DNA from: Octopus sinensis
Taxonomy: Eukaryota
Assembly: GCF_006345805.1 (NCBI RefSeq)
Contig: NC_043010.1
Coordinates: forward strand, 28,520,001 to 28,584,000
Reading direction: 5' to 3'
DNA: 64,000 nucleotides
Part shown: in pieces, positions 1 through 61,070 of the stretch
How positions within the stretch are numbered: the first letter of the stretch is position 1
Layout of the letters: the number at the start of each line of letters is the position of its first letter
Program-made: the position numbers and the translations under genes
The notes under the pieces: generated by a model
Seen by the model: only the letters and a program-made list of their open reading frames with translations
Told to the model about the DNA's origin: nothing
Database searches by the model: none

Positions 1-575
1 CGCCTACTCTTTCCCTCTGTCTTGTATATCTTACTCATTCTCTCATCTCTCTCCCTCCTTTTCATATCCTCCTCTTTTCTCATTTCTCTTTCCTTTCCAT
101 CTCACATCTACCTCTCCTCTCGTCACCTCACCCTCTCTCTCTCATATACTTCTCATTTGCCCATTCTTCTCACTCCGTCTCTCCCTCTCTCTCACATCTT
201 TCATCCTTTCCTGTCTCTTCTTCACTCTGTCTCTCTTTCTCTTGCTATCCTCTCCCTCCCTCTGTCTCTCTTTCTCTTCCCCTCCTCTCCTTCACTCTGC
301 CTCTCTTTATCTTCCCCCCTTCTTCTTCACTCTATCTCTCTTTCTATTCCCTTCCTTTCCCTCACGTTGTCTCTCTTTGTCTCTCCTTCCTCTACCTTCC
401 TCTATCTCTTTAATATGCCACACCCCCTTGCTTTCCTCCTATCACCCTCTCGATTTCTTACATAGCACCTCTCTCTTTCCTTCATATCTCCCTCTCTCTT
501 TCCCTATTTCCCCCTCTGTGTTTCTCCGTCTCTACCTCTCTCTATCTCTCATTACCTCTCTAGCCTCTACTCCCT
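1..575. repeat. CT-rich polypyrimidine low-complexity tract
   Basis: Almost purely C/T on the + strand; the overlapping L/S/P-rich ORFs are compositional artefacts. Confidence 0.85.
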
Positions 576-596: not shown

Positions 597-1440
597 ATGG
601 CACCAAAGTGAGAAAGAAAGAGTTAAATCTTCTGCTACGAGCATGGTGATCCGCCAAACAACATCATCACTGCCGCGCTAAAGAACAATGGCTTTTATAG
701 AACCATTGACCAGATAGAGCGAAAGAAAAGTGAATTTATCCGGTCTTACATGCTTATAAGAACACACATCAACACCTTGGATAACATAATTGAAAATTAT
801 TGTGGCAAGGCTAATAAGGATGAAGAGGACGAAAAAGAGAAAGAACCCGGAAGTCTCTGTAATCCAGAGGTTCCTCAAGAAAATGGATCACCTACCCCGG
901 TGAACGACCAGGCAGGGAATTATAGGGGAGCCAAGGGAGCAGAAACTTGAAGCCTCCCTGTACCAGTGGTCCTACAAAGAAATGAGAAATTAGAAAAACA
1001 GAAGAAAAAAGGAAGAACGGAAAACAAAAATAAAGAAGGAAAGGAAGGAAAACAACCAAAGCTGAAACCCCAACCCACCACACAAATAGCAGAGAACCCC
1101 ATGGAGGATCCAATGCCACCCAGCACACTTCAGGAAAAAGAAATCTGGAAAGCACCCAAGAACCTGTAAATTCTACCTGCGGGGAGGACGGCAAAAATTG
1201 CCGGTTTGCCCACCCGACACCCTGCCAGAACTTCAGGGGACTCAAAGAGAAAAGCTTTAATGAGGGAAGACAGGAAATGTCTCCCAGGAAAACATTCAGA
1301 AAAGGAGTGTGCTCCTCAGATGTTCTGCGCAACGCAGCAGCTGAGCAAGAGTCTTTTTTGTGCATGGCGCAAAAGATTGTCCAGCAGCTAACCTGGTTAC
1401 ACCAAGCACAAAGAAGGAACCTTTCCCACCACTATGCAAG
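597..1440 (+). pseudogene. LINE A ORF1 remnant: Myb/SANT-like N-terminus, low-complexity linker, CCCH-type zinc fingers
   Basis: ATG at 597. With frameshift repair: MAPKW-RKKELNLLLRAW ... IITAALKNNGFYRTIDQIERKK, then TCKFYLRG-EDGKNCRFAHPTPCQNF at ~1162-1232. Contains stops and frameshifts. Confidence 0.55.
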
Positions 1441-2415
1441 ACCACCACAGTCAACAGACACGGGATGGCCTCCCCTAACGCCTGCACAGCCGTCACCCCA
1501 ATACTTTTACTAAATATTGGGGGCCTGTTGCATCAAAATAAAAACAAAATTTCTTTCCTGAGAGATCTTACTGCATGCAATCAAGCCCTATGTATAGCAC
1601 TCGTGGAAACTCACCTCAGCCCTGATATAGAGGACGCAGAAGTACACGTACCAAACTATGCCTTACTGCGAACAGACAGAAGGGAAAGGAGCCATGGTGG
1701 AGTTGCTGTATACATCCGGGATGACCTCACACCTCAGGTCTTACTATCATGCTCAAATTCGGTATGTGACACTTTAATTGTATACATAAGACAACATAAT
1801 ATAGTCATATGCAATACATATTGCCCACCGGATGCTCCAAATCACATAGGCAAGCTTGAAGATTGCCTCACAAGAATTAAAGAAATCCTCATGAATCTGG
1901 AACACCACGTGACCATATTTCTTATGTGCGATTTCAACTTCCCCAACGTCAAATGGCCCGAAGGTCTCATACTCTCAGGAATGAATCATTGCAAGCAAGT
2001 ACAGGTGGGGTCCCTGCTCAACCTCACCAATGCCTTATTCATGGAGCAAGTTGTACTCAAACCAACTAGGGCGAATAACATTCTGGATCTCTGCTTCATG
2101 AACAATATGTACATCATTCATGATGTGAAAGTGACACCGAAATTAGTCTCGGATCACAACATAATAAAGCTGTCTATGTTTGGGCCGAAAGTAACCAGAG
2201 ACATACAGCCTAAAGGAAGCAACCGAAATCTCTCCAATCTGAACTTCCACAAAGCAGGTTGGAAATCGATCCAAAAAGAGACCCTCAGAGAGGACTGGCC
2301 GAAATGTCTCTCCACACCAGACATTGACATGAAACTAGAATGTTTCATGTCTTCTGTGCAAGCCGTATGCCAGAAATATGTCCCAGAGCACAAGGCCAAA
2401 ACAAATAGGAGCTAG
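1360..2415 (+). pseudogene. LINE A ORF2, apurinic-like endonuclease (EEP) domain
   Basis: Motifs LLNIGGL, VETHL, GGVAVYI, DFNFP, NILDL, SDHN. Confidence 0.92.
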
Positions 2416-8830: not shown

Positions 8831-9553
8831 TGACATAAACAAATATATATACAAATATACATACAAACATATATATAAACAAATATATATATACAAATAT
8901 ATATACAAACATATATATATACAAACATATATATATATACAAATATATATATACAAATATATATACAAACATATATATACAAACATATACATACAAACAT
9001 ATATATACAAACATATACATACAAACATATCTATACAAACATATACATACAAACATATATATACAAATAAATATATACAAATATATATAGAAACATATAC
9101 ATACAAAAATATATATACAAATATATATACAAACATATATATGCATATATATACAAACATAAACATATATATACAAATATATACAAATATATATACAAAC
9201 ATATACATGCGAACACATATATACAAATATATATACAAACATATATACAAACAAATATATACAAATATATATATACAAACATATATATACAAACATATAT
9301 AAACTAATATATATACAAACATATACATACAAATACATATACAAACATGTATATAAAGATATTTACAAATATATGCATACAAACATATATATACAAACAT
9401 ATACATTCAAACATATATATACAAACATACATATACAAACATATATACAAACATATATGTAAATATATATACAAGCACACACATACAAATTATATACAAA
9501 TATATATACAAACATAAAAATATATATACAAATATATATATACAAATACATAT

Positions 9554-9610
<57 letters not shown>

Positions 9611-10825
9611 ATTATATATATATATATATATATTACACACAAACATATATACAAACATATATCCAAACATGTATATACAAACATATATATATATACAAAC
9701 ATATACATACAAACATATACATACAAACATATATATACAAACATATATATACAAACATATATGTATATACAAATATAAATATAAACATATACATACAAAC
9801 ATATAAAAACATATACATACAAACATATATACAAGTATATATACAAACATACATGTACAAATATATATACAAACATATATATACAAATATATATACAAAC
9901 ATATATAAAACATATATATAAAATACACTTACAAACATATATAGAAATACATATAGAAATATATATACAAACATATATATATATAAATATATATGCAAAC
10001 ATATATACAAACATATACATATACAAATATATATACAAACATATATATACAAACATACATATACAAATATATACAAACATATACATACAAACATATATAC
10101 AAACATATATAGAAACATATATCAAACATGTATATACAAACATGTATATACAAACATATATATACAAACATATATATACAAACATATATATACAAACATA
10201 TATACAAACATATATACAAACATATATCCAAACATGTATATACAAACATTTATATACAAACATATATATACAAACATATATATACAAACATATATATACA
10301 AACATATATATATAAACATATATACAAACATATATATACAAACATACATATACAAATATATATACAAACATATATATACATACAAATATATATACAAACA
10401 TATATATATACAAACATATATATATACAAACATACATACAAACATAGATATACAAATATATATACAAACATATATACAAACATATATATACAAACACATA
10501 TATACAAATATATATACAAACATATATATACAAATATATATACAAACATATATATATACAAACATATACATACAAATATATACAAACATACATATACAAA
10601 TATATATATACAAACATACATATACAAATATATATACAAACATATATACATATATATACAAATATATACACAAATATATATATACAAACATATATACAAA
10701 CATATATATATATATATATATACAAGCATACATATACAAACATATATATACAAACATATGCATACAAACATATATATATATACAAATATATATACAAACA
10801 TACATATATACAAATATATATACAA
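8830..10825. repeat. ~2-kb degenerate (TATATATACAAACA)n minisatellite
   Basis: 12-16-bp units with almost no G on the + strand; produces the long Y/I/V/C ORF artefacts. Confidence 0.95.
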
Positions 10826-15914: not shown

Positions 15915-17372
15915 TGGGGTTGGGGTTGGGGTTGGGGTTGGAGTTGGGGTTAAGGTTAGGGTCATGGTCAGGGTCAGGGTTTGGGTAGAGTTAGGGTTAG
16001 GGTTAGGATTAGGGTTATGGTTAGGGTTTGGGGTTAGGGGTTGGGGTTGGGGTTGGGGTCAGGGATAGGGTTAGGGTTAGTGTTAGGGTTAAGGTTAAGG
16101 TTAGGGTTAGGGTTAGGGCAAGGGTTAGCGTTAGGGTTAGGTTTAGCATCCGGGTTAGGGTTAGAGTTAGGGTTAGAGTTAGGCCTAGGGTTAGGGCTAG
16201 GGTTAGTGTTAGGGTAAGGCTTAGGGCTACGTTTAGGGCAAGGGAGTAGGGTTAGGGTTAGGGTTTAGGTTTAGGGTTACGGTTTGTGTTAGGGTCAGGG
16301 TTAGGGTTAGGGGTTAGGGTTTGGCTTAGGTTTAGGGTTCGGGTTAGGGGTTAGGGTTAGGTTTAGTGATAGGGTTTGGGTTAGGGCTAGGGGTTAGGGT
16401 AAGGGTTAGGGCTACGTTTAGGGTAAGGGAGTAGGGTTAGGGTTAGGGTATAGGTTTAGGGTTACGGTTGGTGCTAGGGTTAGGGTTAGGAGTTAGGGTT
16501 AGGCTTAGGCTTAGGCTTAGGTTTAGGGTTCGGGTTAGGGGTTAGGGTTAGGTTTAGTGATAGGGTTTGGGTTAGGACTAGGGGTTAAGGTTAGGGTTAG
16601 AGGGTTAGGGTTAAGGTAAGGGTTAGAGTTAGGGTTAGAAGTTTGGGTTAGTGTAAGGGTTAGGGTGAGGGTTAGGATCAGCGTTAGGGTTAGGGGTTAG
16701 GTTTAGTGATAGGGTTTGGGTTAGTGCTAGGGGTTAGGGTTAGAGGTTTAGGGTTTGGATCTGGGTTAGGGTTAGGGTTAGGGGTTAGGGTTAGGGTTAG
16801 TGTTAGATTTAAGGTTCGGGTTAGGGGTAGGGTTGGGGTTCGGCTTAGAGTTGGGGTTAGGGTGAGCATTAGAGTTTAGGGTTAGGAGTAGGTTTATTGT
16901 TAGGGTTCGGGTTAGGGTTACAGTTAGTGTTAGAGTTTTGGGTTAGGGATAGGGTTAGGGTTAGAGTTAGGGTTAGGGTTAGAGTTAGGATTAGGGTTAG
17001 GGGTTCGGGCTAGGGTTAGGGTTAGGGTTCGGGTAAGAGTTAGGGTTAGGGTTAGGGTTTGGGTTAATGTTAGGGTTAGGGTTAGGGGTAGGGTTAGGGT
17101 TTTGGGATAGGGTTGGGGTTAGGGTTAGGGGTTGGGGTTAGGTTTATGGTTAGGGTTAGGGTTAGCATTACGTTTACTTTTAGGATTAGGGTTAGGGCTA
17201 CGGTTAAGGTTAGGGTTAGGGTTAGTGTTAAGGGTAAGGGTTAGGGTTAATGTTAGGTTTAGGATTAGGGTTAGGGTTAGGGTTAGATTTTTGGTTAGGG
17301 TGAGGGTTAGCGTTACGGTAAGGTTTAGGGTTAGGTTTAGTGTTAGGGTTTGGGTTAGGGTTAGGGTTAGTG
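15915..17372 (+). repeat. Degenerate interstitial telomeric array, G-rich strand (TTAGGG)n
   Basis: TTAGGG dominates, with TTAGGT, TTAGTG, TAAGGG, TTTGGG and TCAGGG variants. Confidence 0.95.
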
Positions 17373-17599
17373 TATATTATAAATATATATAAATACATAT
17401 ATATATAATATATATAAAAACATATATATATAAATACATATATATTATATATATGTATATAATATATTATGTATTTTATATATATATATATTATATATTA
17501 TATATTATATATACAGGTTTTATTATATATATGAATTTATATATATATGTTTTATATATATATATATTTATATATATATATGTATCTATATATATTTGT

Positions 17600-17665
<66 letters not shown>

Positions 17666-17699
17666 ATAATATGCATGTATCTATATACATTTATATATA
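17373..17699. repeat. (TA)n-rich junction between the two opposed telomeric arrays
   Basis: About 330 bp of nearly pure A/T, exactly where array polarity switches. Confidence 0.92.
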
Positions 17700-20600
17700 A
17701 ACCCTGATCCTAACCCCTAACCCTAGCCCTACCCCTAACTCTAACCCTACTCCTAACACTTACCCTAACCCTAACCATAAACCTAACCCTAAATCTAACA
17801 CAAAACATAAACCTTAAGACTTAAGACATAACACTAACCCTAACCCTAAACCTAACCCCAACCCTAACCCTAACCCAAACGCTAAACCTAACCCTAACAC
17901 TAAACCTTACCCTAGCCCTAACCATAACCCTAATCCTAACACTAATCCTACACTAAACCTAACACTAACCCTAACCCTTACTCAAACCTAGCCCTAAACC
18001 TAACCCTAACTCTAAACGCAAACGCTAAGCCTAACACTAAACCTAACCTTAACCCTAACCCTAACCCAACACTAACCCTTACCCTAACCGCAATCCTAAC
18101 ACTTACCTTTACACAAATCCTAACACTAATCCTAACCCTAACCCTAAACTTACCCTAACACTAACCTAACCCAAACCCTAACACCAACACCAAACCTAAC
18201 CCTAACTCTAACACTAAACCTAATCCTAAACCTAACCGTAACATTAACCCTAACTCTAACCCTAATTCAAACACTAGCCCTATCTGTAAACCTAACTCTA
18301 ACCCTAACTCTAACCATAACCCTAACCTGAACCTTAACACTGACACTCCCCTAACACTAACCCTAACCTTAACCCGAACCCTAACCCAAACCCTAACCCC
18401 TAACCCTAACCATAACCCTAACCCAAACAAAAACCCTAACACTAACACTACCCTAACCCTACCCTAAACTTAACACGAATACTAACCCTAAACATAGATC
18501 CTAAACCTAACCCAAACCCAACCCTAAACCTAACCCTAACCCTAACCCTAAACCTAGCCCTAACCCTAACCTAAACCGAACCCCTAACGCTAACACTAAC
18601 CCTAACCCTTACCCTAACCAAAACCCAAACCCTAACCCTAACCCTAACCCTAATGCTAACCCAAACCCAAACCCTAAACCTAAACCTAACCCTAACACTA
18701 AACCTAACTCTAGCCCTAACCCGAACCCTAACCGTAACACTAAGCCTAATCCTAACCCTAACCCTAGCCCTAAACCTAACCCAAACCCTTATCCTAAACC
18801 TAATACTAACCCTAGCCCTAACCCAAAACCTAACATTCACCCTAACCCTGAACCTAGACCTAGCTGTAATCCTAATGAGAACCCTAACCCTAACACTAAC
18901 CCGAACCCTAACCCTTCGATCTAACCCTAAACCTAATCCTAACCCTAACCATATCCGTAACCCTAACGCTAACCCTAACCCTAAGTGAACCCGAACCCGA
19001 ACCCTTGCCCTAATTCGAAACCTAACCCTAACCCTAACACTAAATCAAACGCTAAACATGACACTAAGCCTAACACTAAACCAAGCCCTAACCGAAACCC
19101 TAACCCAACCCTAACCCTAACCCCAAACCCTAACACTAACCCTAACCCTAACCCTAACCCTAAACTTCAACCTAACCATAACCCTAACACTAAACCTAAC
19201 CCAAACCATAAACCAAACCCTAATCCTAACCCTAACCCTATCCGTAACCCTAACGCTAACCCTAACCCTTGCCCTAAACCTAACCCTAATCCTCACCCTA
19301 ACACTAACCAAAACCCTAACCCTTACACAAACACTAACACTAAACGTAACCCTAACCTTAACCCTAATTCAAAGCCTAACCCTAACCCTGGCCCTAACCC
19401 TAACATTAACCCTAACCCTAACACAAATCCTGATGCTAACCATGACCCTAACCCTAACCCTAAACCTAACCCTAAACCTAACCCAAACCCTAACCTTAAA
19501 CCTAAACCTAACCCTAACTCGGACCATAACCCTAACCCTAAACCTAAACCTTGGGCTAAACCTAACCCTAATCGTAACCCTAACCCTAACCTAACCCTAA
19601 ACCTACCCCTAACCCGACAACTAACCCTAACTGTAACACAGAAACTAAACCTAACCCCTAAGGCTAACCCTAGCCCTACCACTCACCCTAAACCTAACCC
19701 TGTCTCTAGACCAAACGCACAAAACTAACCCTAAACCTAACCCTAAACCTAACCCAAACCCTAACCTTAAACCTAAACCTAACCCTAACTCGGACCATAA
19801 CCCTAACCCTAAACCTAAACCTTGGGCTAAACCTAACCCTAATCGTAACCCTCACCCTAACCCTAACCCTAAACCTACCCCTAACCCGACAACTAACCCT
19901 AACTGTAACACAGAAACTAAACCTAACCCCTAAGGCTAACCCTAGCCCTACCACTCACCCTAAACCTAACCCTGTCTCTAGACCAAACGCACAAACCTAA
20001 CCCTAAACCTTACCCTAACCCTAACCCTGACCCTAAACCTAACACAAACCCTAACCCTAAACCTAACCCTAAACCTAAACCAAACCCTAACCCTAACACT
20101 AACCCTGACCCTAACACTAACTCTAAACCTAACCCTAACCAAAACCCTAAACCTAACCCTCACCCTAACCCTAAACATAACCCTAACCCTAAACCTAACC
20201 TAACCCTATCCATAACCCTAACCCTAACCTTAACCCGATCCCTAGACCTAACACTTAAACCAAACCCTATCACTTACCCTAAACCTAACCCCGACCCTAA
20301 CCCTAAACCTAAACTTAACCCTAACCCTAACCCTAACCCTAAACCTAACCCTAACCCTAACCCTAACCCTAAAACTAACCTTCACTCTAACCCTAATCCT
20401 AACCCTTACCCTAAACCTAACCTTCACTCTAACCCTAACCCTAACGCTAGCCCTAACGCAAACCCTAAACCTAACCCTACCCCTAACATTAACCCTAACC
20501 CTAACACTAACAGTACCCAAACCCTCACCCTTAACCCTTACCTACCCTATCCCTTGCCCTATCATTTACCCTAACACTTACCCTTGCCCAAAACCCTAAA

Positions 20601-23460
20601 CCTAACCCTAACCCCAACCCTAACCCTAGCGCTAAACTTAACGCTAGCCCTAACCCTAAACCTGACCCTAACCCTAACCTAACCCTTAATCCTAACCCTA
20701 ACCCTAACACTAAACCTAACCTTAAAGCTAACCCTAAACCTAACCCTAACCCTAACCCTAAAGCTAACCCTTACCCTTACCCTAAACCTAACCGTAAACC
20801 TAATACTAACCCTAACCCTAACCCTAAACGTAACCTTAACCTTAACCCTAACCAGACTCCTAACCCTAACTCTAACATTAGCCCTAACCCAAACCCTAAC
20901 CTTAACCCTATGCCTAACCCTAAACTTAAAACTAACCCTAAACCTACACCAAAACCTAACCCTAGACATAACCTTAACCTAACGCTAACCCTAACCCTAA
21001 CCATAAACCAAACCCTAGCCCTAACCCTAAACCTAACACTAATCCTAAACTTTAACATAACCCTAACCCTAACTCTAACACTAACCTAACCCTTACCCGT
21101 ACCCTAACCCTAAACCTAACCCAAACCCTAACTCTAACCCTAACCATAACCCTAACCCTGAACATAACCCTAACCTTAACCCTTAACCTAACCCTAACCC
21201 TAACCCTAACGCTAACACTAAATCTAAACCCTAACCTTAGCCCTAAACCTAACCTTAACCCTAACCCTAACCCTATCCGAAACCTAACCCTACCCTAACC
21301 CTATAACTAACCCCAACCCTAAAACTAACCCTACCGTAACCTAACCCTAATCTAACCCTAACGCTAACCCTAACACAAACCCTAACACTACCCTAACCCT
21401 AATCCTAACGCTAACCCTAACGCTAACGCTAGCCCTAACCCTAACCCTAACCCTAACCCTAATCCAAACCCTAATCTTGACCCTAGCCCTTCACCCTAAA
21501 CCTAGCCCTAAACCTAAACCTAACCCCTAACGCTAACCCTAACTCTAACCCTAACCCTAACCCTAGCCCTAACGCCAAACGCTTTCCCTAATCCTAACCC
21601 TTATAGCTAACACTAACCCTAACCCTAACACTAATCCTAACCATAAACCTAATCCTAACCTTATCTCCAACCCTAATCCTATCCCTAATCCTGACCCTAA
21701 CACTAAACCCTATCCGTAGCCGAATCCTTACGCTAACCCTAACCCTAACCTTAAACCTAACCCTACCCTTTACCCTAAACCTAACCCTCGCCCTAACCCA
21801 TACCCTAAACATAATCATAACTCTAACCCTTAACCTTAACCCTAACCCTAACACTAACCCTAACCCTAAGCCTAACCAAAACCCTAACCCTAATGTAAAC
21901 ACCTTACCCTAACCCTAACCCTAACCGAAACCCTAACCCGAATTCTAACACCTTACCCTAACCCTAACTCTACCCTAACTCTAAATCTGAACCTAACCCT
22001 TCCATTAACCCTAACACTAACCCTAACCCTAACCCTAACTCCTAACCCTAACCCTAACCTAACCCTACCCTAACTCCTAACCCTAACCCTAACCTTAAAC
22101 CTAACCGTAATGCTGACCCTAACCCTAACCTAACCCTTACCCGTACCCTAACCCTAAACCTAACCCAAACCCTAACTCTAACCCTAACCATAACCCTAAC
22201 CCTGAACATAACCCTAACCTTAACCCTTAACCTAACCCTAACCCTAACCCTAACGCTAACACTAAATCTAAACCCTAACCTTAGCCCTAAACCTAACCTT
22301 AACCCTAACCCTAACCCTATCCGAAACCCTAACCCTACCCTAACCCTATAACTAACCCCAACCCTAAAACTAACCCTACCGTAACCCTAACCCTAATCTA
22401 ACCCTAACCCTAACCCTAACACAAACCCTAACACTACCCTAACCCTAATCCTAACGCTAACCCTAACGCTAATGCTAGCCCTAACCCTAACCCTAACCCT
22501 AACCCTAATCCAAACCCTAATCTTGACCCTAGCCTTTCACCCTAAACCTAGCCCTAAACCTAAACCTAACCCCTAACGCTAACCCTAACTCTAACCCTAA
22601 CCCTAACCCTAGCCCTAACGCCAAACGCTTTCCCTAATCCTAACCCTTATAGCTAACACTAACCCTAACCCTAACACTAATCCTAACCATAAACCTAATC
22701 CTAACCTTATCTCCAACCCTAATCCTATCCCTAATCCTGACCCTAACACTAAACCCTATCCGTAGCCGAATCCTTACGCTAACCCTAACCCTAACCTTAA
22801 ACCTAACCCTACCCTTTACCCTAAAACTAACCCTCGCCCTAACCCATACCCTAAACATAATCATAACTCTAACCCTTAACCTTAACCCTAACCCTAACAC
22901 TAACCCTAACCCTAAGCCTAACCAAAACCCTAACCCTAATGTAAACACCTTACCCTAACCCTAACCCTAACCGAAACCCTAACCCGAATTCTAACACCTT
23001 ACCCTAACCCTAACTCTACCCTAACTCTAAATCTGAACCTAACCCTTCCATTAACCCTAACACTAACCCTAACCGTAAACCTAATCCTAACCTTAACCCT
23101 AAACCTAACCCTAACCCTAACCCTAACCCTTAAACCTAACCGTAATGCTGACCCTAACCCTAACCCTTGCCCTAACCCTAACCCTAACACAAACCGTAAC
23201 CCTAAACCTAAACCCAAACCCTAACTCTAACCCCACTCCCTTACCCTAAACGTAGCCCTAACCCTTACCCTAACACTAACCCTAACCCTAGACCTAACCC
23301 TAGTCCTAACACTAAGCCTAACCCTAACTCTAACCCTAACCCTAACCCTTACCCTAACCCTAACCCTAACCTTATCCATAACCCTAACCCTAACCCTACC
23401 CTAGACCCTAACCCGAACGCTAAGCCTAACCCTAACACTAACCCTTGCCCTAACCCTTGC
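17700..23460 (-). repeat. Degenerate interstitial telomeric array, (CCCTAA)n on +
   Basis: 5.8 kb of CCCTAA and variants, with internal 272-bp and 1046-bp tandem duplications. Confidence 0.95.
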
Positions 23461-26400
23461 TATTTCCGTCAATTTCCGGCAGTCTCCGTCAATCTCCGGC
23501 AGTCTCCGTCAATCTCCGGCAAACTCCGGCAATTTCGCCAATCTCCGGCTAACTCCACCAATCTCCACAAATCTCCGGCAAACTCCGGCAAAGTACGCAT
23601 ATCTCACTCTAGCGCCGCCTATCTCCGCCAATCTAGCTCCGCCTATCTCACTATATCTCCGCCTATATCACTCTATCTCCGCCTATCTCACACTATCTCC
23701 GCCTATCTCCACCAATCTCACTCTATCTACGCCTATCTCACTTTATCTCACTCCCAGGTGTTTTAACACCCAGCACTTTTGGGAAATCTCCCAAAATGCT
23801 ATTCCGCCTATCTCCACCAATCTCTGAAAATCTCCGACAATAACCGCCTATCTCACTCTGTCTCGCCCTATCTCACTCTATCTACCGCCTATCTCACTCT
23901 CTCTAAATATCTTAACACCCAGCATTATTGTCATATCTCCCAAAATGCTATTCCGCCTATCTCCGCCTATCTCCGCGCATCTCCGCATATCTCCGCGCAT
24001 CTCCACGTATCTCCGCCAATCTCCGCCAATCTCCGCCAATCTCACTCTTTCCCTCTCTCCCAGGTGTTTTAACACCCAGCATTATTGGGAATTCAACCCC
24101 AAATGTGATTCCGCAAATCTCCGCAATCTCCAGCAATCTCCGGTAATCTCAGTTAATTTCCAGTTATCTCCAGCAATCTCCAGCAATTTCCGGCAAACTC
24201 CGGCAATCTCCGACAAACTCCGCCCATCTCACTCTATTTCCGCCTATCTCCGCCAATCTCACTCTATCTCCACCTATCTCACTCTATCTCACACTCTGCC
24301 TGGTGTTTTAACGCCCAGCATTATTGGGAAATCTCCCAAAATGCTATTCCTACAATCTTCGGCTATCTCTGGCTATCTCCGGCTATCTCTGGCTATCACC
24401 GGCAATCTCCCGTAAACTCTGGCAATCTCCGGCAATCTCCGGCAATCTCCGGCAATCTCCAGCAATCTCCGGTAATCTCAGTTGATTTCCAGTTATCTCT
24501 GGCAATCTCTGGTAATCTCCGGCTATCTCTGGCAATCTCCCGTAAACTCCGGCAATCTTCAGCAATCTCCGGCAAAATACGGCAATCTCCGGCAAACTCC
24601 GCCTATCTCCACTAAATCTCCAGCAAACTCCACCAATCTCCGGCAAACTCCGCCACACTACACCAATCTCATTCTAGCTCCGCCTATCTCCGCCAATCTA
24701 ACTCCGTCTTTGCGACTATCTCATTCTATCTCCGCCAGTCTCACTATATCTCCGCCTATCTCACACTATCTCCGCCTATCTCACTCTCTCTCCACCTATC
24801 TACGCCTATCTCACTCTATCTCCGCCTATCTCACTCTATCTCCGCCTATCTCCGCCTATCTCACCAATCTATCTCCGCCTATCTCACTCTATCTCCGACT
24901 ATCTCCAACAATCTCCGCAATCTCCAGCAATCTCCGGTAATCTCAGTTAATCTCTGGTTATCTCCGGCAATCTCCAGCAATCTCCGGCAAACTCCTGCAA
25001 TCTCCAACAAACTCCGCCCATCTCACTCTATCTCCACCTATCCCAGGTGTTTGAACACCCAGCATTATTGGAAAATCTCCCAAAATGCTATTCCACCAAT
25101 CTCTGCCAATCTCAATCTATCTCCACCTATCTCCGGCTATCTCAGCCTATCTCACTATCTCTCTCACTCTCTCTTTCTCTCTCTCTCTCTCTCTTCCAGG
25201 TGTTTTAACACCCAGCATTGGGAAATCTCCCAAAATGCTATTCCGCCTATCTCCGTCTATATCTGGCTATCTCACTCTCTCCCAGGTGTTTTAACACCCA
25301 GCATTATTGGGAAATCACCCAAAATGCTATTCCGCCTATCTCACTCTCTCCCTCTCTCCCAGGTGTTTTTTGACACACAGCATTATTGGGTAATCTCCCA
25401 AAATGCTATTCCGCCTATTTCTGGCAGTCTCTGGCTATCTGCGGCAATCTCCGGCTATCTCCGGCTATCTCTGGCTATCTCCATCAATCTCTGGCCATTT
25501 CTGTCAATCTTGCCAATCTCACTATTTCACTCTCTCACAGATGTTTTAACACCCAGCATTATTGGGAAATAACCCAAAATGCTATTCCGCCAATCTCACT
25601 CTATCTCACTCTCTCCCAGGTGTTTTAACATGCAGCATTATTGGGAAACCGCCCAAAATGCTATTCCACTAATCTCCGCCTATCCCACTATCTCCCTCTC
25701 TCCCAGGTGTTTTAAAGCCCAGCATTACTGGGAAATCTCCCAAAATGCTATTCCGCCAATCTCTGCCTATCTCCGCCTGTCTCCACCAATCTCCACCAAT
25801 CTCCGCCTATCTCCCTATATCTCTCTCTCTCCCAGGTGTTTTAATATCCAGCATTATTGGGAAATCTCCAAAAATGCTATTCCGCCTATCTCTGCCTATC
25901 TCACTCTCTCCCTCTCTCCCAGGTGTTTTCACACCCAGCATTATTGAGAAATCTTCCATAATACTATCTCGCTTATCCCCGATAATCTCCAGCAATCTCC
26001 GGCTATCTCTGGCCATCTCCGGCAATCTCTTGCATTCGACGGTAATCTCTGGCAATCCCTGCCAATCTCACTCTATCTTACTCTCTACCAGGTGTATTAA
26101 CACCCAGCATTATTGGGAAATCTCCCAAAATGCTATTAAGCCAATCTCCGCCAATCTCACTCTATCTCCGCCTATCTCACTCTCTCCCAGGTGTTTTAAC
26201 ACCCAGCATTATTGGGAAATATCCCCAAATTCTATTCCACCCATCTCCGCCTATCTCACTCTCTCCAAGGTGTTTTAATACCCAGCATTATTGGGAAATC
26301 ACCCAAAATGCTATTCCGCCAATCTCACTCTATCTCTACCTATTGCACTCTATCTCACTCTCTCCCAGGTGTTTTAACACACAGCATTTTTGGGAAATCT

Positions 26401-28326
26401 CCCAAAATGCTATTCCGCCAATCTCCACCAATCTCCGCCTATTTCTGTCAATCTCCGCCATTCTCCGCCTATCTCACTATCTCCCTCTCTCCCAGATGTT
26501 TTAAAACCCAGCTTTATTGGAAAATCTCCCAAAATTCTTTTCCGCCTATCTCCGGCAATCTCTACCTATCTCACTCTATCTCCGTCTATCTCCGCGTAGC
26601 TCCGTCTTTCTCACTCTCTCCCAGGTGTTTTAATACCCAGCATTATTAGGAAATCTCCCAAAATGCTATTCCACCTATCTCTGCCTATCTCACTCTCTCC
26701 CTCTCTCCCAGCTGTTTTAACACCCAGCAATATTGGGAAATCTCCCAAAATGCTCTCCGTCTATCTCCCAGGTGTTTTAACACCTAGCATTATTGGGAAA
26801 TCTCCCAAAATGCTATTTCGCCTTTCTCCGCCTATCTCCCAGGTGTTTTCACACGCAGCATTATTGGGAAATCTCCCAAAATGCTATTCCACTTATCTCT
26901 GGCAATCTCTGGCTATCTCCTTCTATCTGCAGCAATCTCTGGTCATCTCCCGCTATCTCCAGCAGTCTCCAGCAATCTACGGTAATCTCCGGCAATCTCT
27001 GGCAATCTCCAGCTATCTCCGGCAATCTCTGCCAATCTCACTGTCTCCCAGGTGTTTTAACACCCAGCATTATCGGGAAATCTCTCAAAATGATATTACG
27101 CCAATCTCATTCTATCTCCGCCTGTCTCACTCTATCTCACTCTCTCCCAGGTGTTTTAACACCAAGCATTATTGGGAAATCTCCCCAAATTCTATTCTGC
27201 CCATCTCCTCCTATCTCCACCTATCTCTACCTATCTCCGGCTATCTCCGCCTATCTCACTCTCTCTCTCTCTCTCCCAGGTGTTTTTATACCCAGCATTA
27301 TTGGGAAATCTCCCAAAATGCTATTCCACCTATCTCACTCTCTCCCTCTCTCCCAGGTGTTTTGACACCCAGCATTATTGGGAAATCTCCCAAAATCTAT
27401 TCCACCTATCTCCGCGCATCTCCCAGGTGTTTTAACACCCAGCAATTTTGGGAAATCTCACAAAATGATATTCCGCCTATCTCCGGCAATCGCCAGCTAT
27501 CTCCAGCAATCTCCGGCAATCTCCGGCTATCTCAGGCTATCTCCGCCTATCTCCAACTATCTCCGGCAATCTCACTCTATCTCACTCTCTCCCAGGTGTT
27601 TTAACACCCAGCCTTATTGGGAAATCTCCCAAAATGCTATTCCGCCTATCTCCCAGGTGTTTTAATACCCAGCAGTATTGGGAAATCTCCCAAAATGCTA
27701 TTCTGCCAATCTCTGCCTATCACCACCTATCTTCGACAATCTCTGCCTTTCTCACTCTCTCCCTCTCTTCCAGGTGTTTTAACACCCAGCATTATTGGTA
27801 AATCTCCCAAAATGCTATTCCGCCTATCTCCGCCAATCTCCACCTATCTCCGCCAATCTCTACCTATCTTACTCCATCTCACTCTCTCCCTCTCTCCCAG
27901 CATTTTTGGGAAATCTCCCAAAATGCTATTCCGCCTATCTCATCCAATCTCTGCCAAATTCTCGCCAATCTCCGCCTATCTCACTCTATGTCCGCCTATC
28001 TGCATCTATCTCACCCTCTCCCAGGTGTTTTAATATCCAGCATTATTGGGAAATCACCTAAAATGCTATTCCTCCTATCTCCGCCTATCTCACTCTCTCC
28101 CAGGTGTTTTAACATCCAGCATTATTGGGAAATCTCCTAAAGTGCTATTCCTCCTATCTCCGCCTGTCTCATCCAATCTCTTCCAATCTCTGCCAATCTC
28201 CGCTAATCTCCACCTATCGCTGCCTATCTCACTCTCTCTCCGCCTATCTCCACCTATCTCTGCCTATCTCCATCTATCCTACTCTCTCCCAGGTGTTTTA
28301 ATACCCAGCATTATTGGGAAATCTCC
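23461..28326 (+). repeat. Telomere-adjacent satellite: ~34 double-hairpin cores separated by decamer-built spacers
   Basis: Core ccaggtgttttaacacccagcattattgggaaatctcccaaaatgctattcc; spacers made of ATCTCCGGCA, ATCTCCGCCT, ATCTCACTCT and similar words. Confidence 0.95.
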
Positions 28327-28510
28327 TGTCATCGTTGTCGTCGGAAAAATATATTAGGAATAAGAACCCAGGTTCGAAATTTCCCCAAGACACCTGATGA
28401 AGTCTGCAGGGTATATCAACTGAAACGTTGTGTTAACAACAAACAAGATGAGAACAAATATCCGTCAAATGTAAATGATGTAAATAATGTACATAATTCT
28501 TCATCTTTTA
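28327..28510 (+). mobile_element. Penelope-like element terminal (pLTR) fragment carrying a hammerhead motif
   Basis: Contains gacacCTGATGAagtctg...caactGAAACgttgtgtt. The Penelope assignment rests on the known association of minimal hammerheads with PLE termini. Confidence 0.55.
28389..28434 (+). ncRNA. Minimal type I hammerhead ribozyme motif
   Basis: Stem I GACAC/GTGTT; CTGATGA at 28394-28400; stem II AGT(c)TG/CAACT; GAAA at 28422-28425; palindromic AACGTT stem III; predicted cut after 28429. Confidence 0.6.
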
Positions 28511-29379
28511 GATACAAGTTCTTTTTTTTTTGAAAGTTACAGAAAATTTATTTGTTCATTTTGCCCAAAACTTTGTAGCTCTGGGTTTATTTGGTTATTT
28601 TTAAAAACTGTTCCCACAGAAGTTATACTGAATAATCTAGCTCTAGTTTCTTTGTTTAATATTTTAAATTAATATATTTCAGTTTTAAATGAGGATCATT
28701 ATATTAATTTCTTATGCTATTTCAAATACTTAGGGCAATCTTGTCTCTTTGATTGCCAAACTAAGATAACAAGTGACTTTGATAACTGACTGAAAATGGA
28801 AGTTAGTCTACATTAAATCTGTTGGCATATTATAGTGGTCGATTTTTTTTTTTTTTTTTTAGTAAGCTCATCCTGCTGGTTAATGGCATTACAATTTCGA
28901 ATGCTATAAACTTTTATGTAACTCTTTGAAAAGTTATGTCTGAAATTCCATAACTTCAAATCTTGCAGTGACAGTGCTTCCTGCTGTAGTCAAAATATCC
29001 AGTCATTGTTCCAGCTAGTTAAGGTCCTCAAAGCATCCTGGCTAGCACTATACCTCACCAGTGGTACTAATGTTCCTTGTCAGTTATTAACTGTGTACAT
29101 CTCACACAAAGAATATATCCTTTAGATTTCCATTTAGAAGTCAAATCCAGTATTTCATGCTGCCTCCACAAATCACCTCACTAGATGAGTTGTTATATAT
29201 CCATGCAAATATGTTGCACTGGATTTCTAAAGCAAAAAATTTGCACAAATACTGTTATGTATTATGTAAATATGAATACTAAATGATATAGCACTTTCTA
29301 TTTTGTAACCTACTATATACATTTATTAAAAAAGTTATAGCCAAAATAACATTTAAATGAAAAAGTAGATGCCTCTTAT

Positions 29380-39109: not shown

Positions 39110-39526
39110 GGATCTTTTCCTTTTGAACAGTTTTCAACACAATTTCTAGTTAACTAAACACTTTAAAACTTCGTATACTGGTAGAACGTGTCAAAATAAA
39201 ACATTTTTTCTCTTGGCTTTCTTGAGAAAATTGTAATTTGTAAGTTTAACGTAGTTTAATTTTTCGAATTTTAACCAATCGATCGCCTCTATTCAGCTAA
39301 AATCATTTGATGCGTCTAAAACTGAGACAACATCCTGACACTAACCCTAACCCTAGCTCTAACCCTAACCCTACACTAATCCTAACCCCAACCCTAACCC
39401 TAAATTTTAGCCTTTCGTTTTTTTTTTTTCTTAATTGTTAAATTAATTTAACCAGTATACGAAGTCTAAAAGTGTTTAGTTAACTAGAAATTGTGTTGAA
39501 AACTGCCGTTCAAAAGGAAAAGATCT
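39110..39526. mobile_element. Second GGATC-type MITE, containing a telomere-like (CCCTAA)n block
   Basis: Same TIR family as 31904-32752; near-perfect TSD ccttcaag / cctccaag; CCCTAA variants at 39339-39403. Confidence 0.85.
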
Positions 39527-56775: not shown

Positions 56776-58476
56776 TCAAGTTTTGTTTATGGTCCATTCA
56801 AGTAGTGAGTTGTATCCAATTATGGGTGGTTTATCTGGTATTCCTTGAAGGAATCTATTCAGACTCCGTTTAAAGTTGATGGGATCCTTTTCCTCTTTGA
56901 TCCCTTTCGGGACAATGTTAAATAGGGCAGGGCATGTTGAGGAAAAGAAATTATGTTGCAGTGTACATGTATGCTGTGATCTGGAATTGGGCAGGGGACG
57001 TATGGCCCGTGATCCCAGTCTTGGATGAACCTTGAAGCTAATGGGCAAAGTTGGCGATATATTCTCCACATTGTACAAATGATGTACCGCTCACAGCGAC
57101 GCTGGATAGTGTAGAGTTTCAAGGCTTTAAGGCGATCCCAATAATCGAGAGCAGCCATGCCTTCAATTCGTTTGGTGAGTGCCCTCTGGGGTGATTCAAT
57201 CCTCGAGATGTTTTGTCTTGTATGGAGAGACCACAGTGGGCAGCAGTATTCGAGTTGTGGCCGTACAAAGGAGGAAAAAAGTGGTATGATGACACATTGT
57301 TCTCTGGACCGGAAAGTTCTTAAGATCCAGGAACTCATCCTACGAGCTATATCGACCTTCTTGTTGATGTGTGCACTCCAACTGAGATCGTCATCAACAA
57401 TTACACCCAGGTCTCGGATATTGTTAGAGGCTGTGAGCGGATCCCCTGAAGGAAGAGAGTATGGCTGTTTTAGTGAGGAATTTCTTCCAAAATGCATCAG
57501 CTCAAATTTTCCCTCGTTCAGTTGCATTTTGTTTTTGTCTGCCCATTGACTCACAGCATATAGATCAGACTGGAGTTGAGTTCGGTCTGCTTCTTCATTC
57601 ACAATTTGCTGGAGCTTAGTGTCATCAGCAAATATTTTCACTTTGCAGTAATGTACGACACTGGAAAGGTCGTTTATGTAAATTATGAAGAGTAGCGGAC
57701 CCAAGATAGTCCCCTGGGGGACACCGCTGGTGACTTTTGCTGGGCTTGAGTGGACTCTGTCAACTACAACATGTTGTGTTCTATTCGCCAGGAAATACTT
57801 GATCCAGTGTAGAACTTTTCCACGGATTCCAACATTTGCCAGTTTTGAGAGTAGGATATTATGGTCTACCGTCTACCCTGTCGAACGCTTTACTGAAGTC
57901 AAGATATATGACATCAGAGTTCGAACCTGTTCCCAAGGCTTTGAGTACATCTTCAATATGGTGCAAGAGCTGTGTTAGACAGTCCCTGCCACAGCGAAAG
58001 CCATGCTGATTTGCATTTAGGAGTTTGTGGGTCTCCAGGAAGTCAGCTATCCTTGATCTTAACACTCTTTCAAACACTTTAATGATGTGGGAGGTGAGTG
58101 AGATTGGGCGATAGTTGAGTGCGAGGGATCTGTTTCCCTGTTTGAAAACCGGGATGACTGACTGGGATAGAAACTGTTTCGGTATATAACCTGCGTCTAA
58201 CGAATTTCTCCTGAGGTTGGTCAGAGGGGCTGTAAGTTGGTGTCTACATTCCTTCAGGAGACTAGCGGGGAATCTATCAGGGCCTACAGCAGAGTAGTAT
58301 TTGACCTCATTTATTGCTGCTATGATGTCAGTTGCAGTGAAGGTTATGTCAGAGATTTTATGTTGAGAGTCAACTTCGTTCGCTTCTCTTACATTAATAT
58401 CAGTGGGAACACTAAAGACAGAGCAGTATTTCTGCCATTTCTTTAGCATCGTGTTGGGAAATGCCGTTATCATCAA
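56776..58476 (-). pseudogene. LINE B reverse transcriptase (frameshifted)
   Basis: NYRPISLTSHIIKVFERV, QHGFR, YLDFSKAFDRVD, GPLLFIIYINDL, FADDTKL; a 7-bp tandem duplication gtctacc at 57864-57877 shifts the frame. Confidence 0.93.
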
Positions 58477-58686
58477 TCAATGGCCCAATGGGTGAGACAG
58501 TGGTTCTATGCTTATTTGCATAAGAATAGAACACTTTTGGGTTCTGTTTGATGTTTTTGATTACCCACTGTTCCTCCACAGCTCTTTGATTTTCAATGGA
58601 GGTTTTCATGTCGGTCTGCAGATGAAGTTTTTCCAGCTCTAGCCTTTTCATTGTTGTTGAATGTGGATGTTGTATGTGGGAATATT

Positions 58687-59745
58687 TTAATTGGTTGATT
58701 TTTTTGTTGAGTCTTTTGATGCGCCTGATGAGTGTTTTTTTCTTTTAGGGAGCCGGTTTCTGTTTGTGTTAGTAGATTTTGTGGGAGCGTGTTTAGAGCA
58801 TGTATAGGTGACAATGTTGTCAAAGTGCTGCCATGCGGTCTCAATATGGGTGGAATTGAGAGTAAAAGACCAGTCGATGAAAGACAGATCCTTTCTGATT
58901 GCTCCCCAGTCCGCTTTGTGGAAGTTTATGTTGTCAAATGAGTGCCATGGAGTGGGATTGGCTGGTTTGGTTTTTATATGTCGGGAATTAAAATTGCAGA
59001 GTACCATGTCGTAGTCTGAGAGGAGAATTTTTTCAACTGAAATACTGTGAACGAAGCTAGAGTGATTGGTCAATACTAGATCCAAGATCGTTTTATTCTG
59101 TCTCATTGGTTCGAGCACTAGCTGAGTCAGGAAGTATTCATCCATTAGATTAAAGAGCAGTTCTGCTGCTGCTCTATCTGATGTAGAGCATTTGCCTAAC
59201 TTCAGAGTATTTGTGGGCCAGTTCACATGAGGGAGGTTAAAATCACCCATCACTAGTATATTTCCGGAGTTGTACTTCCGAAGGAAGGACTTGACTTTGC
59301 TAAGGCACTCTTCAAAACACTTTAGAGGTGCTTGGGGAGGCCTGTAAAGACCAACAATGATTATGTCCTTGGCCTTGTTGAATAGTGATACAGATTCACA
59401 ATAGCCATTGGAAAATATGTCCTTGGCATCAAGTGAAAAGGAGTCATGGATAAAGATGTCTGTCCCTCCCTCATTTCGGTCTGTGCGATCCACACGTACA
59501 ATGGTGAAATCTTTTATTTTCACCTCGGCGTCCATATGGGTGTTGTTCAGGTGAGTCTCGGTAAGGATAAAGAAAGGGAAGCAATGTGCCGTTTCGGCAA
59601 GCCAACTCTCTATATATGGGATCTTCCATTTTTGGGCAATAATTGATGGGTTGATGCCACCTACATTTAACAGGAATGTCGAGGTAAGGGAAGTTTGATG
59701 TTTGCATTGTTCTAAGTTATGTTTTATGTTGTTCAGTGGTAACAA
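58687..59745 (-). pseudogene. LINE B APE endonuclease domain
   Basis: LLNVGGI, LTETHL, GLYRPP, MGDFNLP, ILDLVLT, SDYDMV. Confidence 0.92.
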
Positions 59746-60824: not shown

Positions 60825-60878
60825 ACATATATATATATATTATAATATATATATATAATATATATATATGTATTTATG

Positions 60879-60909
<31 letters not shown>

Positions 60910-60914
60910 GTATT

Positions 60915-60953
<39 letters not shown>

Positions 60954-61027
60954 GTATATATATATATGTATTATTATATATATATGTATTTATGTATATA
61001 TATATATGTATTTATGTATATATATAT

Positions 61028-61070
<43 letters not shown>

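What the first reader, a model, noticed from the sequence alone, without database searches (positions are those of the whole stretch)
23755..28326. Repeat-spacer satellite with ~34 conserved double-hairpin cores next to the telomeric array
Seen: each ~52-bp core has hairpin 1 GGTGTT-tt-AACACC and hairpin 2 AGCATT(A/T)TTGGGA-aatc-TCCCAAAATGCT, a 12-bp perfect stem in some copies. Cores are far more uniform than the spacers, giving a CRISPR-like look in a eukaryote. Inference: an undescribed telomere-associated structured element. Cores could be protein-binding or cruciform sites, processing signals in a TERRA-like transcript, or amplified ends of a rolling-circle element.
Basis: partly seen in the sequence, partly recalled or inferred. 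Interest (0 to 1): 0.78.

Follow-up and report, generated by a model that had tools for sequence, protein, structure and literature searches.

The report
Telomere-adjacent compound minisatellite with palindromic cores
This is an ordinary animal tandem repeat beside an old, internal telomere-like tract: a 10-base minisatellite that carries 34 copies of a 53-base hairpin-forming segment, with no sign that the hairpins are kept by selection.

Summary
There are 34 same-strand copies of a 53-bp core in 23753-28326 and none elsewhere in the window. The core consensus folds into two hairpins (z about -5 to -6). The array starts right after a 5.8-kb (AACCCT)n tract.

The CRISPR-like reading does not hold. 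Every "spacer" is a run of one 10-bp minisatellite, [A/T]ATCTC(CGCC/CGGC/ACTC). Spacer lengths step in tens. Whole multi-unit blocks, cores and spacers together, are duplicated at 85-87% identity.

The hairpins show no sign of selection:
- There are no compensatory changes.
- Pairing is 89.6%, the same as in shuffled controls.
- Stem columns mutate as often as non-stem columns (5.5% vs 4.7%).
- Only 7 of 34 copies keep all 12 pairs of hairpin 2.
- One copy has lost hairpin 1 by slippage between CCCAG repeats.

Cores are only modestly more uniform than spacers.

The neighbouring telomere-like tract is degenerate. It is also internal here, lying head-to-head with a (GGGTTA)n tract.

Best reading: a telomere-associated compound satellite amplified by unequal exchange and slippage. 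Its palindromes come from one ancestral unit. The sequence family has no match in any collection I could search, but the kind is well known. Interest is low.

The parts
15917..17370 (+). Context: degenerate (GGGTTA)n telomere-like tract, G-rich strand on +.
   Evidence: TRF (period 6, 238 copies, 75% matches). 63-72% of bases lie in exact hexamers. About 8% substituted from a perfect array.
17373..17699 (.). Context: TA-rich low-complexity joint between the two head-to-head telomere-like tracts.
   Evidence: sequence read directly.
17700..23457 (+). Context: degenerate (AACCCT)n telomere-like tract, C-rich strand on +. This is the orientation expected at a left chromosome end, followed by its subtelomere.
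   Evidence: TRF (959 copies, 72% matches). Exact-hexamer cover is 54-83% with no gradient. About 9% substituted.
23458..25041 (+). Telomere-proximal domain of the array. Long runs of the 10-bp minisatellite [A/T]ATCTC(CGCC/CGGC/ACTC), up to 691 bp. Only 4 cores. CpG-rich (observed/expected 1.1-1.5, GC about 0.50).
25042..28326 (+). Core-dense domain. 30 cores separated by 7-156 bp of the same 10-mers. CpG observed/expected about 0.4-0.7. Contains duplicated multi-unit blocks.
26767..26819 (+). Best-preserved core copy, the only one with all 6 + 12 Watson-Crick pairs. Hairpin 1 is at 26771-26784 (GGTGTT-TT-AACACC). Hairpin 2 is at 26786-26814 (AGCATT-A-TTGGGA AATC TCCCAAAATGCT).
   Evidence: consensus folds.
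27896..27932 (+). Core copy 31, which lacks hairpin 1. The deletion runs exactly between the two CCCAG direct repeats of the core (positions 1-5 and 17-21). This is a slippage footprint.
   Evidence: row window:27880-27932.
28288..28326 (+). Last core, cut at core position 39, where the array meets AT-rich unrelated sequence.
25673..25962 (+). Example of a three-core block duplicated in register at 26462-26751. 290 bp, no gaps, 86.9% identity (core 89.4%, spacer 84.2%).

Best explanation
This is a telomere-associated compound tandem repeat of an animal genome. A 10-bp CpG-containing minisatellite ([A/T]ATCTC followed by CGCC, CGGC or ACTC) abuts a telomere-type (CCCTAA)n tract.

Inferred history: a 53-bp non-repetitive segment, which happens to hold two short palindromes, entered this minisatellite once. 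It was then co-amplified with variable numbers of 10-mers. The processes would be unequal sister-chromatid or homologue exchange, gene conversion and replication slippage. That gives units of variable length (about 60-750 bp) that look like 'repeat + spacer'.

The hairpins are inherited from the single founder unit and are decaying neutrally. At most they help slippage or template switching, which drives the amplification (inference, not shown). The cores look more uniform mainly because a unique 53-mer mutates only by point changes. The 10-mer runs also change by gain, loss and shuffling of variant repeats and by CpG decay.

Shown here: the anatomy, the stepped spacer lengths, the block duplications and the lack of covariation. 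Inferred: the amplification mechanism and the neutrality of the hairpins.
For: - All spacers resolve into the same 10-mer. The commonest forms are TATCTCACTC (25), TATCTCCGCC (24) and AATCTCCGGC (17).
- Spacer lengths step in tens: 16 of 33 are 6 mod 10 and 7 of 33 are 4 mod 10.
- Every core meets the 10-mers at the same two junctions...CTCTCT|CCCAGG and ATTCC|GCC[T/A]ATCTC. All copies share one orientation and there are no inverted self-matches.
- Multi-unit blocks are duplicated in register: 25673-25962 against 26462-26751, 290 bp ungapped at 86.9%; 26243-26552 against 27025-27336 at 85.6%. Core and spacer identity inside these blocks do not differ significantly (Fisher p = 0.22 and 0.81).
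- Structure test on 34 copies: 0 pairs with changes on both sides (shuffle mean 1.3), 89.6% of cells paired against a shuffle mean of 89.6%, covariation score 0.060 against 0.063.
- Stem columns are 5.5% substituted against 4.7% for unpaired core columns, p = 0.49.
- Of 63 disrupted stem cells, 34 are transversion-type mismatches on either strand.
- Only 7 of 34 copies keep 12/12 pairs in hairpin 2, and only 1 of 34 keeps both stems intact.
- Copy 31 lost hairpin 1 between the CCCAG direct repeats.
- 51 of about 133 CpG-type 10-mers carry TpG or CpA at the CpG site, while the core consensus has no CpG.
- No Rfam family matches the region.
- A satellite-DNA review states that monomers often carry inverted repeats and palindromes, that within-array variability is usually up to about 10%, and that such motifs may aid tandemisation (PMC12692304, read).
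Against: - Cores are still about 1.6 times less divergent than same-length spacers (12.3% against 19.5%; 17.7% without CpG transitions). Weak constraint on the core as a whole is therefore not excluded.
- The copies are young paralogues, about 5% from consensus. A covariation test has little power here, and its silence is not proof of neutrality.
- A 12-bp stem plus a 5-6-bp stem in 53 bp is far beyond shuffled expectation (z about -5 to -6), although this counts as a single founding event.
- Genome-wide distribution and transcription are unknown.
Confidence: 0.8

Rival explanations
1. The core is a functional structured element of a telomere-adjacent domain. It could be a cruciform or protein-binding site in DNA. 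It could also be a hairpin signal in a transcript running from the array into the telomere-type tract (TERRA-like), kept uniform by selection.
For: - The double hairpin in the consensus is strong.
- Cores are somewhat more uniform than spacers.
- Hairpin 2 keeps at least 10 of 12 pairs in 27 of 34 copies.
- The telomere-proximal 1.6 kb is CpG-rich tandem repeat (observed/expected 1.1-1.5). This recalls the human CpG-island repeat promoters of TERRA (PMC6600276; bioRxiv 10.1101/2025.05.15.654290, both seen).
Against: - There are no compensatory changes, and pairing equals the shuffled controls.
- Stems are not better conserved than loops or flanks.
- Most stem changes are true mismatches on both strands.
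- One copy lacks hairpin 1.
- The neighbouring telomere-type tract is degenerate and internal.
- 38% of CpG-type 10-mers have decayed to TpG or CpA, which is not what a protected unmethylated promoter island shows.
- No Rfam match.
Confidence: 0.08
2. The core descends from the end of a mobile element: a Helitron or Helentron 3' hairpin region, or a MITE or foldback element. It was tandemised next to the telomere-type tract, as described for many mollusc satellites.
For: - Hairpin-bearing short units combined with micro- or minisatellites resemble Helitron-associated tandem repeats reported in oysters and other animals (PMC12692304).
- The window is rich in transposon debris.
Against: - No CT[AG][AG] follows within about 10-12 nt of hairpin 2; the sequence there is ATTCCGCC[T/A]ATCTC.
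- The unit ends carry no terminal inverted repeats or target-site duplications, and every copy shares the same junctions, so there was one founding event.
- No copy lies outside the array in 64 kb.
- The reading frames of 150 aa or more outside the simple-repeat tracts are non-LTR endonuclease and reverse-transcriptase pieces plus one with no annotation attempted (892-1365, - strand); none was recognised as a Rep/helicase.
- No match in the viral, metagenome or prokaryote-genome collections, nor among 5.8 billion predicted proteins.
Confidence: 0.09
3. Assembly artefact. The head-to-head telomere tracts and the irregular array come from a chimeric join or from collapsed, error-rich long reads, so the fine structure is unreliable.
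For: - Two telomere-type tracts face each other across a TA-rich low-complexity joint, and both are uniformly degenerate with no purity gradient.
Against: - The window has no N.
- Cores are only about 5% from consensus while the hexamer tracts are about 8-9% substituted. Random read error cannot explain both.
- Shared diagnostic variants define duplicated blocks, as expected of real sequence.
- 10-mer variants follow CpG-decay logic rather than random error.
Confidence: 0.03

Closest known systems
Telomere-associated (subtelomeric) satellite and minisatellite arrays of eukaryotes
   Same: - A tandem, single-orientation, strand-asymmetric repeat (GC skew about -0.5) directly abuts a (CCCTAA)n tract, with its C-rich strand continuous with the telomeric C-strand.
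- It shows variant repeats, a higher-order block structure and concerted evolution.
   Different: - The adjoining telomere-type tract is degenerate and internal in this window.
- Whether the family sits at other chromosome ends is unknown.
- The unit is compound: a 53-bp core plus a variable number of 10-mers.
Satellite DNAs whose monomers carry palindromes or dyad symmetries (general property reviewed in PMC12692304)
   Same: - The unit holds short inverted repeats predicted to form stem-loops or cruciforms.
- Within-array divergence is about 5-12%.
- Such palindromes have been proposed to aid tandemisation.
   Different: No centromere context. There is no evidence here that the structure is retained by selection.
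Human subtelomeric CpG-island '61-29-37' repeat promoters of TERRA (PMC6600276; bioRxiv 10.1101/2025.05.15.654290)
   Same: - CpG-rich tandem repeats lie within about 1.6 kb of a telomere-type tract, 23458-25041 (observed/expected 1.1-1.5).
- The preprint's title covers TERRA promoters at interstitial as well as telomeric sites.
   Different: - No sequence relation was tested or is claimed.
- Transcription and factor binding are unknown.
- Heavy CpG to TpG/CpA decay argues against a protected island.
- The hairpin cores are concentrated in the CpG-poor distal domain, not in the CpG-rich part.
Helitron/Helentron- or MITE-associated tandem repeats of molluscs
   Same: Short units combined with micro- or minisatellite stretches and a hairpin motif, in an invertebrate-type genome rich in transposons.
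   Different: No element termini, no CTRR, no target-site duplications, no dispersed copies in the window, no Rep/helicase gene.
CRISPR arrays
   Same: Superficial alternation of a conserved palindromic unit with variable-length intervening sequence.
   Different: - The intervening sequence is not unique. It is one 10-bp minisatellite of variable copy number, spanning 7 to 691 bp.
- The genome is eukaryotic, and the repeats themselves diverge by 5-12%.

Membership tests
Telomere-associated (subtelomeric) tandem repeat | Directly adjoins a telomeric-repeat tract, in the subtelomere orientation. | tested here: met
   (AACCCT)n ends at 23457 and the 10-mer array starts at 23458. The first core lies 295 bp further in. 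The C-rich strands are continuous.
Telomere-associated (subtelomeric) tandem repeat | The adjoining telomeric tract is a terminal, functional telomere. | tested here: not met
   The tract is about 9% substituted with no purity gradient. It is followed on the far side by a TA-rich joint, an opposed (GGGTTA)n tract and 15.9 kb of other DNA.
Telomere-associated (subtelomeric) tandem repeat | The family recurs at several chromosome ends of the genome. | not testable with these tools
   The source genome is not available. The core is absent from the metagenome, prokaryote-genome and viral collections.
Satellite or minisatellite evolving by unequal exchange and slippage | Head-to-tail copies, length variation in steps of the short unit, and duplicated multi-unit blocks. 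| tested here: met
   Spacer lengths fall in 10-bp steps. Ungapped 290-bp and 312-bp multi-unit duplicates occur at 86-87% identity. One copy shows a slippage deletion between CCCAG repeats.
Repeat-spacer (CRISPR-like) array | Spacers are unique sequences unrelated to one another. | tested here: not met
   All 33 spacers and the 295-bp leader are runs of the same 10-mer. Same-length spacers are 74-97% identical.
Conserved structured RNA or DNA element | Base pairs are maintained by compensatory or covarying substitutions, and stems are more conserved than unpaired positions. | tested here: not met
   0 compensatory pairs. Pairing is 89.6%, equal to the shuffle mean. Stem columns are 5.5% substituted against 4.7% for unpaired columns. 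Power is low because the copies are young paralogues.
Known RNA family (Rfam 15) | A covariance-model match. | tested here: not met
   No match at gathering score in the whole window. No match at E <= 1 in 23400-28400.
Helitron 3' end | A hairpin about 10-12 nt upstream of a CTRR terminus, a 5' TC, a Rep/helicase gene or dispersed copies. | tested here: not met
   ATTCCGCC[T/A]ATCTC follows hairpin 2, with no CTRR. No copy lies outside the array. No Rep/helicase frame was recognised among the ORFs of 150 aa or more; four of them match endonuclease or reverse-transcriptase domains, and one non-repeat ORF (892-1365, - strand) was not scanned.
MITE or foldback element | Terminal inverted repeats at the unit ends, with target-site duplications at independent insertion sites. 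| tested here: not met
   The two palindromes are internal and separate, and the unit ends are not inverted repeats of each other. All copies share one junction pair, so there was a single founding event.
TERRA-promoter-type subtelomeric CpG-island repeats | CpG-rich tandem repeats close to the telomeric tract. | tested here: met
   23458-25041 has GC about 0.50 and CpG observed/expected 1.1-1.5. The CpG sits inside the repeat unit, so this follows from the repeat's own sequence.
TERRA-promoter-type subtelomeric CpG-island repeats | Drives transcription toward the telomere, with factor binding (CTCF, NRF1) and an unmethylated state. | not testable with these tools
   No expression or methylation data are available. 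CpG decay in 51 of about 133 CpG-type 10-mers hints at germline methylation.

The most novel reading that the evidence does not exclude
The 53-bp double-hairpin core is a lineage-specific functional module of chromosome-end-type chromatin. For example it could be a cruciform or protein-docking site, or a processing signal in a subtelomere-to-telomere transcript. It would be kept uniform by selection plus homogenisation, and found at many chromosome ends of this animal's genome. The young paralogous copies seen here are too similar for covariation to show.
Probability: 0.07. Interest if true: 0.55.

Novelty: new member of a known kind. Interest (0 to 1): 0.2.

Why it matters
As it stands, this mainly matters for annotation. 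It is a compound telomere-associated satellite and should be masked and named as such. It should not be read as a repeat-spacer system or a structured RNA.

It is a tidy example of how a unique palindromic segment caught in a minisatellite can mimic a "conserved repeat + variable spacer" array.

The context is the more useful lead. A subtelomere-type satellite beside head-to-head degenerate telomere tracts could mark an old chromosome fusion or an inverted internal telomeric site. If the core family proves specific to chromosome ends, it would serve as a cytogenetic and assembly marker for ends and fusion points in this genome.

Tried and rejected
- CRISPR-like repeat-spacer reading: rejected, because the spacers are all one 10-mer.
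- Selected RNA or DNA structure: tested with the named structure on 34 copies and found no support.
- Known RNA family or tRNA: none found.
- Relatives elsewhere. Exact and degenerate core patterns gave 0 hits in the metagenome collection (2 scans), the prokaryote-genome collection (2 scans) and the viral collection (1 scan).
- Protein-space trick. I searched a 313-aa ORF that reads through about 10 cores in all frames, to pull out spurious ORFs from other assemblies. It returned only 3 hits, all to the peptide encoded by the 10-mer (AISGYLRLSP...). These led to (GGCTATCTCC)n minisatellites without cores in L001 and L002.
- Organism identification. An exact look-up of a window ORF failed. The best relative of the reverse-transcriptase fragment (73% amino-acid identity) lies in NCBI assembly GCA_024449705.1. 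I could not find a name for that assembly in the paper library. My impression that the dispersed repeats look cephalopod-like rests on memory only and was not tested.
- CpG decay as the full explanation for spacer variability: rejected as sufficient. It removes only about 2 of 19.5 percentage points in same-length comparisons. Most of the excess must come from turnover of 10-mer variants.
- The whole-window repeat finder was swamped by simple repeats and added nothing.
- A first fuzzy-regex scan timed out and was replaced by blastn-short.
Full report
**What is there.**
The window is eukaryotic DNA with vertebrate-type telomere hexamers. From left to right the region reads as follows:
- a degenerate (GGGTTA)n tract at 15917-17370;
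- a 330-bp TA-rich joint;
- a 5.8-kb degenerate (AACCCT)n tract at 17700-23457;
- from 23458 to 28326, a C-rich tandem array (GC skew about -0.5);
- then unrelated AT-rich sequence.

Inside the array, blastn-short with the consensus CCCAGGTGTTTTAACACCCAGCATTATTGGGAAATCTCCCAAAATGCTATTCC finds 34 copies. All are on the + strand, all lie between 23753 and 28326, and none lies elsewhere in the 64 kb. Two half-patterns searched with up to 3 mismatches give 23 and 31 matches, against 0 in 100 shuffles.

**The hairpins.**
The consensus folds into exactly the two stem-loops described. As DNA it gives -13.2 kcal/mol (z = -5.9) and as RNA -19.3 kcal/mol (z = -4.8). Hairpin 1 is effectively a 5-6-bp stem. 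Hairpin 2 is a 12-bp stem with one bulged base. In individual copies the stems are eroding:
- 7 of 34 copies keep 12/12 Watson-Crick pairs in hairpin 2;
- 12 of 34 keep 6/6 pairs in hairpin 1;
- only the copy at 26767 keeps both.

**The 'spacers' are not spacers.**
Cutting the inter-core sequence at each NATCT shows one 10-bp minisatellite throughout. This holds for every interval and for the 295 bp between the telomere-type tract and the first core. The commonest forms are TATCTCACTC (25), TATCTCCGCC (24), AATCTCCGGC (17) and TATCTCCGGC (9). Interval lengths run from 7 to 691 bp and step in tens: 16 of 33 are 6 mod 10 and 7 of 33 are 4 mod 10. Every core meets the 10-mers at the same two junctions...CTCTCT|CCCAGG and ...ATTCC|GCC[T/A]ATCTC. 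This points to one founding event followed by amplification, not repeated insertions. The CRISPR-like picture therefore fails on its defining point.

**How it was amplified.**
Self-comparison shows collinear blocks of several units:
- 25673-25962 against 26462-26751 is 290 bp, ungapped, 86.9% identical and spans three cores with their spacers.
- 26243-26552 against 27025-27336 is 85.6% identical with 2 gaps.

Inside these blocks core identity (89%) is not significantly higher than spacer identity (84-87%), with Fisher p = 0.22 and 0.81. There are no inverted self-matches. Copy 31 (27896) lacks hairpin 1 through a deletion lying exactly between the two CCCAG direct repeats of the core. The last copy is cut at core position 39, where the array ends. 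Together these are the usual footprints of unequal exchange, conversion and slippage in a satellite.

**Is the structure selected?**
I counted the named structure on the alignment of all 34 copies (A1):
- 89.6% of cells pair, identical to the mean of 500 shuffles (89.6%).
- No pair has a change on both sides (shuffle mean 1.3).
- The covariation score is 0.060 against 0.063.

After masking non-homologous ends, stem columns are substituted at 65/1175 = 5.5% and unpaired core columns at 25/537 = 4.7% (p = 0.49). Of 63 disrupted stem cells, 34 are mismatches on either strand, 19 would be G·U in a + strand RNA and 10 in a - strand RNA. There is no bias toward structure-preserving change. With about 5% divergence per site, roughly 0.95^24, or about 29%, of copies should keep hairpin 2 untouched; 7 of 34 (21%) do. 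The caveat is that these are young paralogues, so the test has little power and cannot prove neutrality.

**Are cores 'far more uniform'?**
Only modestly. For unit pairs with equal spacer length, pairwise divergence is 12.3% in cores and 19.5% in spacers, or 17.7% after removing CpG transitions. Two intrinsic causes are visible:
- The 10-mers carry a CpG in each CGCC or CGGC unit. 51 of about 133 such units now read TG or CA at that site. The core consensus has no CpG at all.
- Runs of 10-mers also change by gain, loss and reshuffling of variant repeats. A unique 53-mer cannot change that way.

CpG decay alone explains only a small part of the excess. Weak constraint on the core as a whole is not excluded.

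**Telomere context.**
The array is in the position and orientation of a subtelomere: (CCCTAA)n, then the repeat, then unique DNA. But the hexamer tract is not a live telomere in this window:
- Only 54-83% of its bases lie in exact hexamers.
- It is about 9% substituted, with no purity gradient.
- It faces an equally degenerate (GGGTTA)n tract (about 8% substituted) across a TA-rich joint.
- A further 15.9 kb of transposon-bearing DNA lies beyond.

Only the right-hand tract has this satellite beside it. A relic of an end-to-end fusion, an inverted internal telomeric site and a mis-join are all possible, and reads or synteny would decide. Sequencing noise cannot explain the degeneracy, because the cores are only about 5% from their consensus.

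**Two domains.**
The telomere-proximal 1.6 kb (23458-25041) is almost pure 10-mer, with 4 cores, GC about 0.50 and CpG observed/expected of 1.1-1.5. The distal 3.3 kb (25042-28326) holds 30 cores and has CpG observed/expected of about 0.4-0.7. The proximal part formally resembles the CpG-island tandem repeats that act as TERRA promoters in human subtelomeres (PMC6600276; bioRxiv 10.1101/2025.05.15.654290). However, the CpG richness follows from the repeat unit itself, the CpGs are visibly decaying, and the hairpin cores are concentrated in the other domain. I keep this as a lead, not a finding.

**Comparison with what is known.**
No Rfam family matches the region and no tRNA was found. The core pattern is absent from the metagenome, prokaryote-genome and viral collections. 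A protein-space search with an ORF reading through about 10 cores returned only hits to the peptide encoded by the 10-mer. Those hits led to (GGCTATCTCC)n minisatellites without cores in two unrelated contigs. Helitron-end and MITE features were looked for and not met (no CTRR, no terminal inverted repeats or target-site duplications, no dispersed copies); no Rep/helicase frame was recognised among the long ORFs, one of which (892-1365, - strand) was not scanned.

Reviews of satellite DNA describe the properties seen here as ordinary. Monomers often carry inverted repeats or palindromes, within-array variability is up to about 10% under concerted evolution, and such motifs may aid tandemisation (PMC12692304). 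A general review of telomere neighbourhoods and internal telomeric sequences was also consulted (PMC9498494).

The source organism was not established. The best relative of a reverse-transcriptase fragment in the window is in NCBI assembly GCA_024449705.1, for which I could find no name. My impression that the dispersed repeats look cephalopod-like rests on memory only.

**Verdict.**
This is a telomere-associated compound minisatellite or satellite. Its palindromic core is inherited from one founder unit and was amplified in place. The sequence family appears undescribed in what I could search, but it is a new member of a well-known kind. Interest is about 0.2.

The most novel reading still open, at about 7%, is that the core is a functional chromosome-end module of this lineage. 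Genome-wide mapping, cross-species covariation and transcript data would settle it.

Noticed in passing
window 15917-23457: Head-to-head telomere-type tracts: (GGGTTA)n at 15917-17370, a TA-rich joint at 17373-17699, and (AACCCT)n at 17700-23457. Both tracts are about 8-9% substituted with no purity gradient. This could be a relic of an end-to-end chromosome fusion, an inverted internal telomeric site or an assembly mis-join. Only the right-hand tract has the satellite beside it.
   Followed up: partly
window 23458-25041 versus 25042-28326: The array has two domains. The telomere-proximal domain is CpG-rich and almost pure 10-mer (observed/expected 1.1-1.5, 4 cores). The distal domain is CpG-poor and core-dense (observed/expected about 0.4-0.7, 30 cores).
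   Followed up: partly
L001 10170-10400; L002 300-620: Near-identical 10-bp minisatellites, (GGCTATCTCC)n, occur without cores and without telomere repeats in two unrelated public contigs. One is an ENA 195-kb contig and the other a TARA Oceans scaffold. The 10-mer motif is therefore not unique to this locus or genome.
   Followed up: partly
window 1360-2415 (+) and 56859-59745 (-): Fragments of non-LTR retrotransposons with endonuclease and reverse-transcriptase domains (Pfam PF14529, PF03372, PF00078). The right-hand one is broken into at least three reading frames. Its closest relative, at 73% amino-acid identity, is on a 934-bp contig of NCBI assembly GCA_024449705.1.
   Followed up: partly
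window 39341-39403: A short internal telomeric stretch, (CTAACC)n with about 10 units, in the same orientation as the large (AACCCT)n tract.
   Followed up: no
window 8835-10825 and 60827-61370: A 2-kb AT-rich minisatellite, (ATATACAAATAT)n with a 12-14 bp period, has a related inverted array about 50 kb away. It produces long spurious YIYI-type ORFs.
   Followed up: no
window 102-552: A CT-rich imperfect tandem repeat with periods of 35, 70 and 105 bp at the left edge of the window. Its composition resembles the CTCTCT leader that precedes each core, but no relationship was shown.
   Followed up: no
window 28327-28535: The array ends abruptly inside a core. The adjoining sequence contains a GGTTCGAA box-B-like motif and a T-run at about 28522-28532. 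This may be a SINE-like insertion that truncated the array. ARAGORN finds no tRNA there.
   Followed up: no
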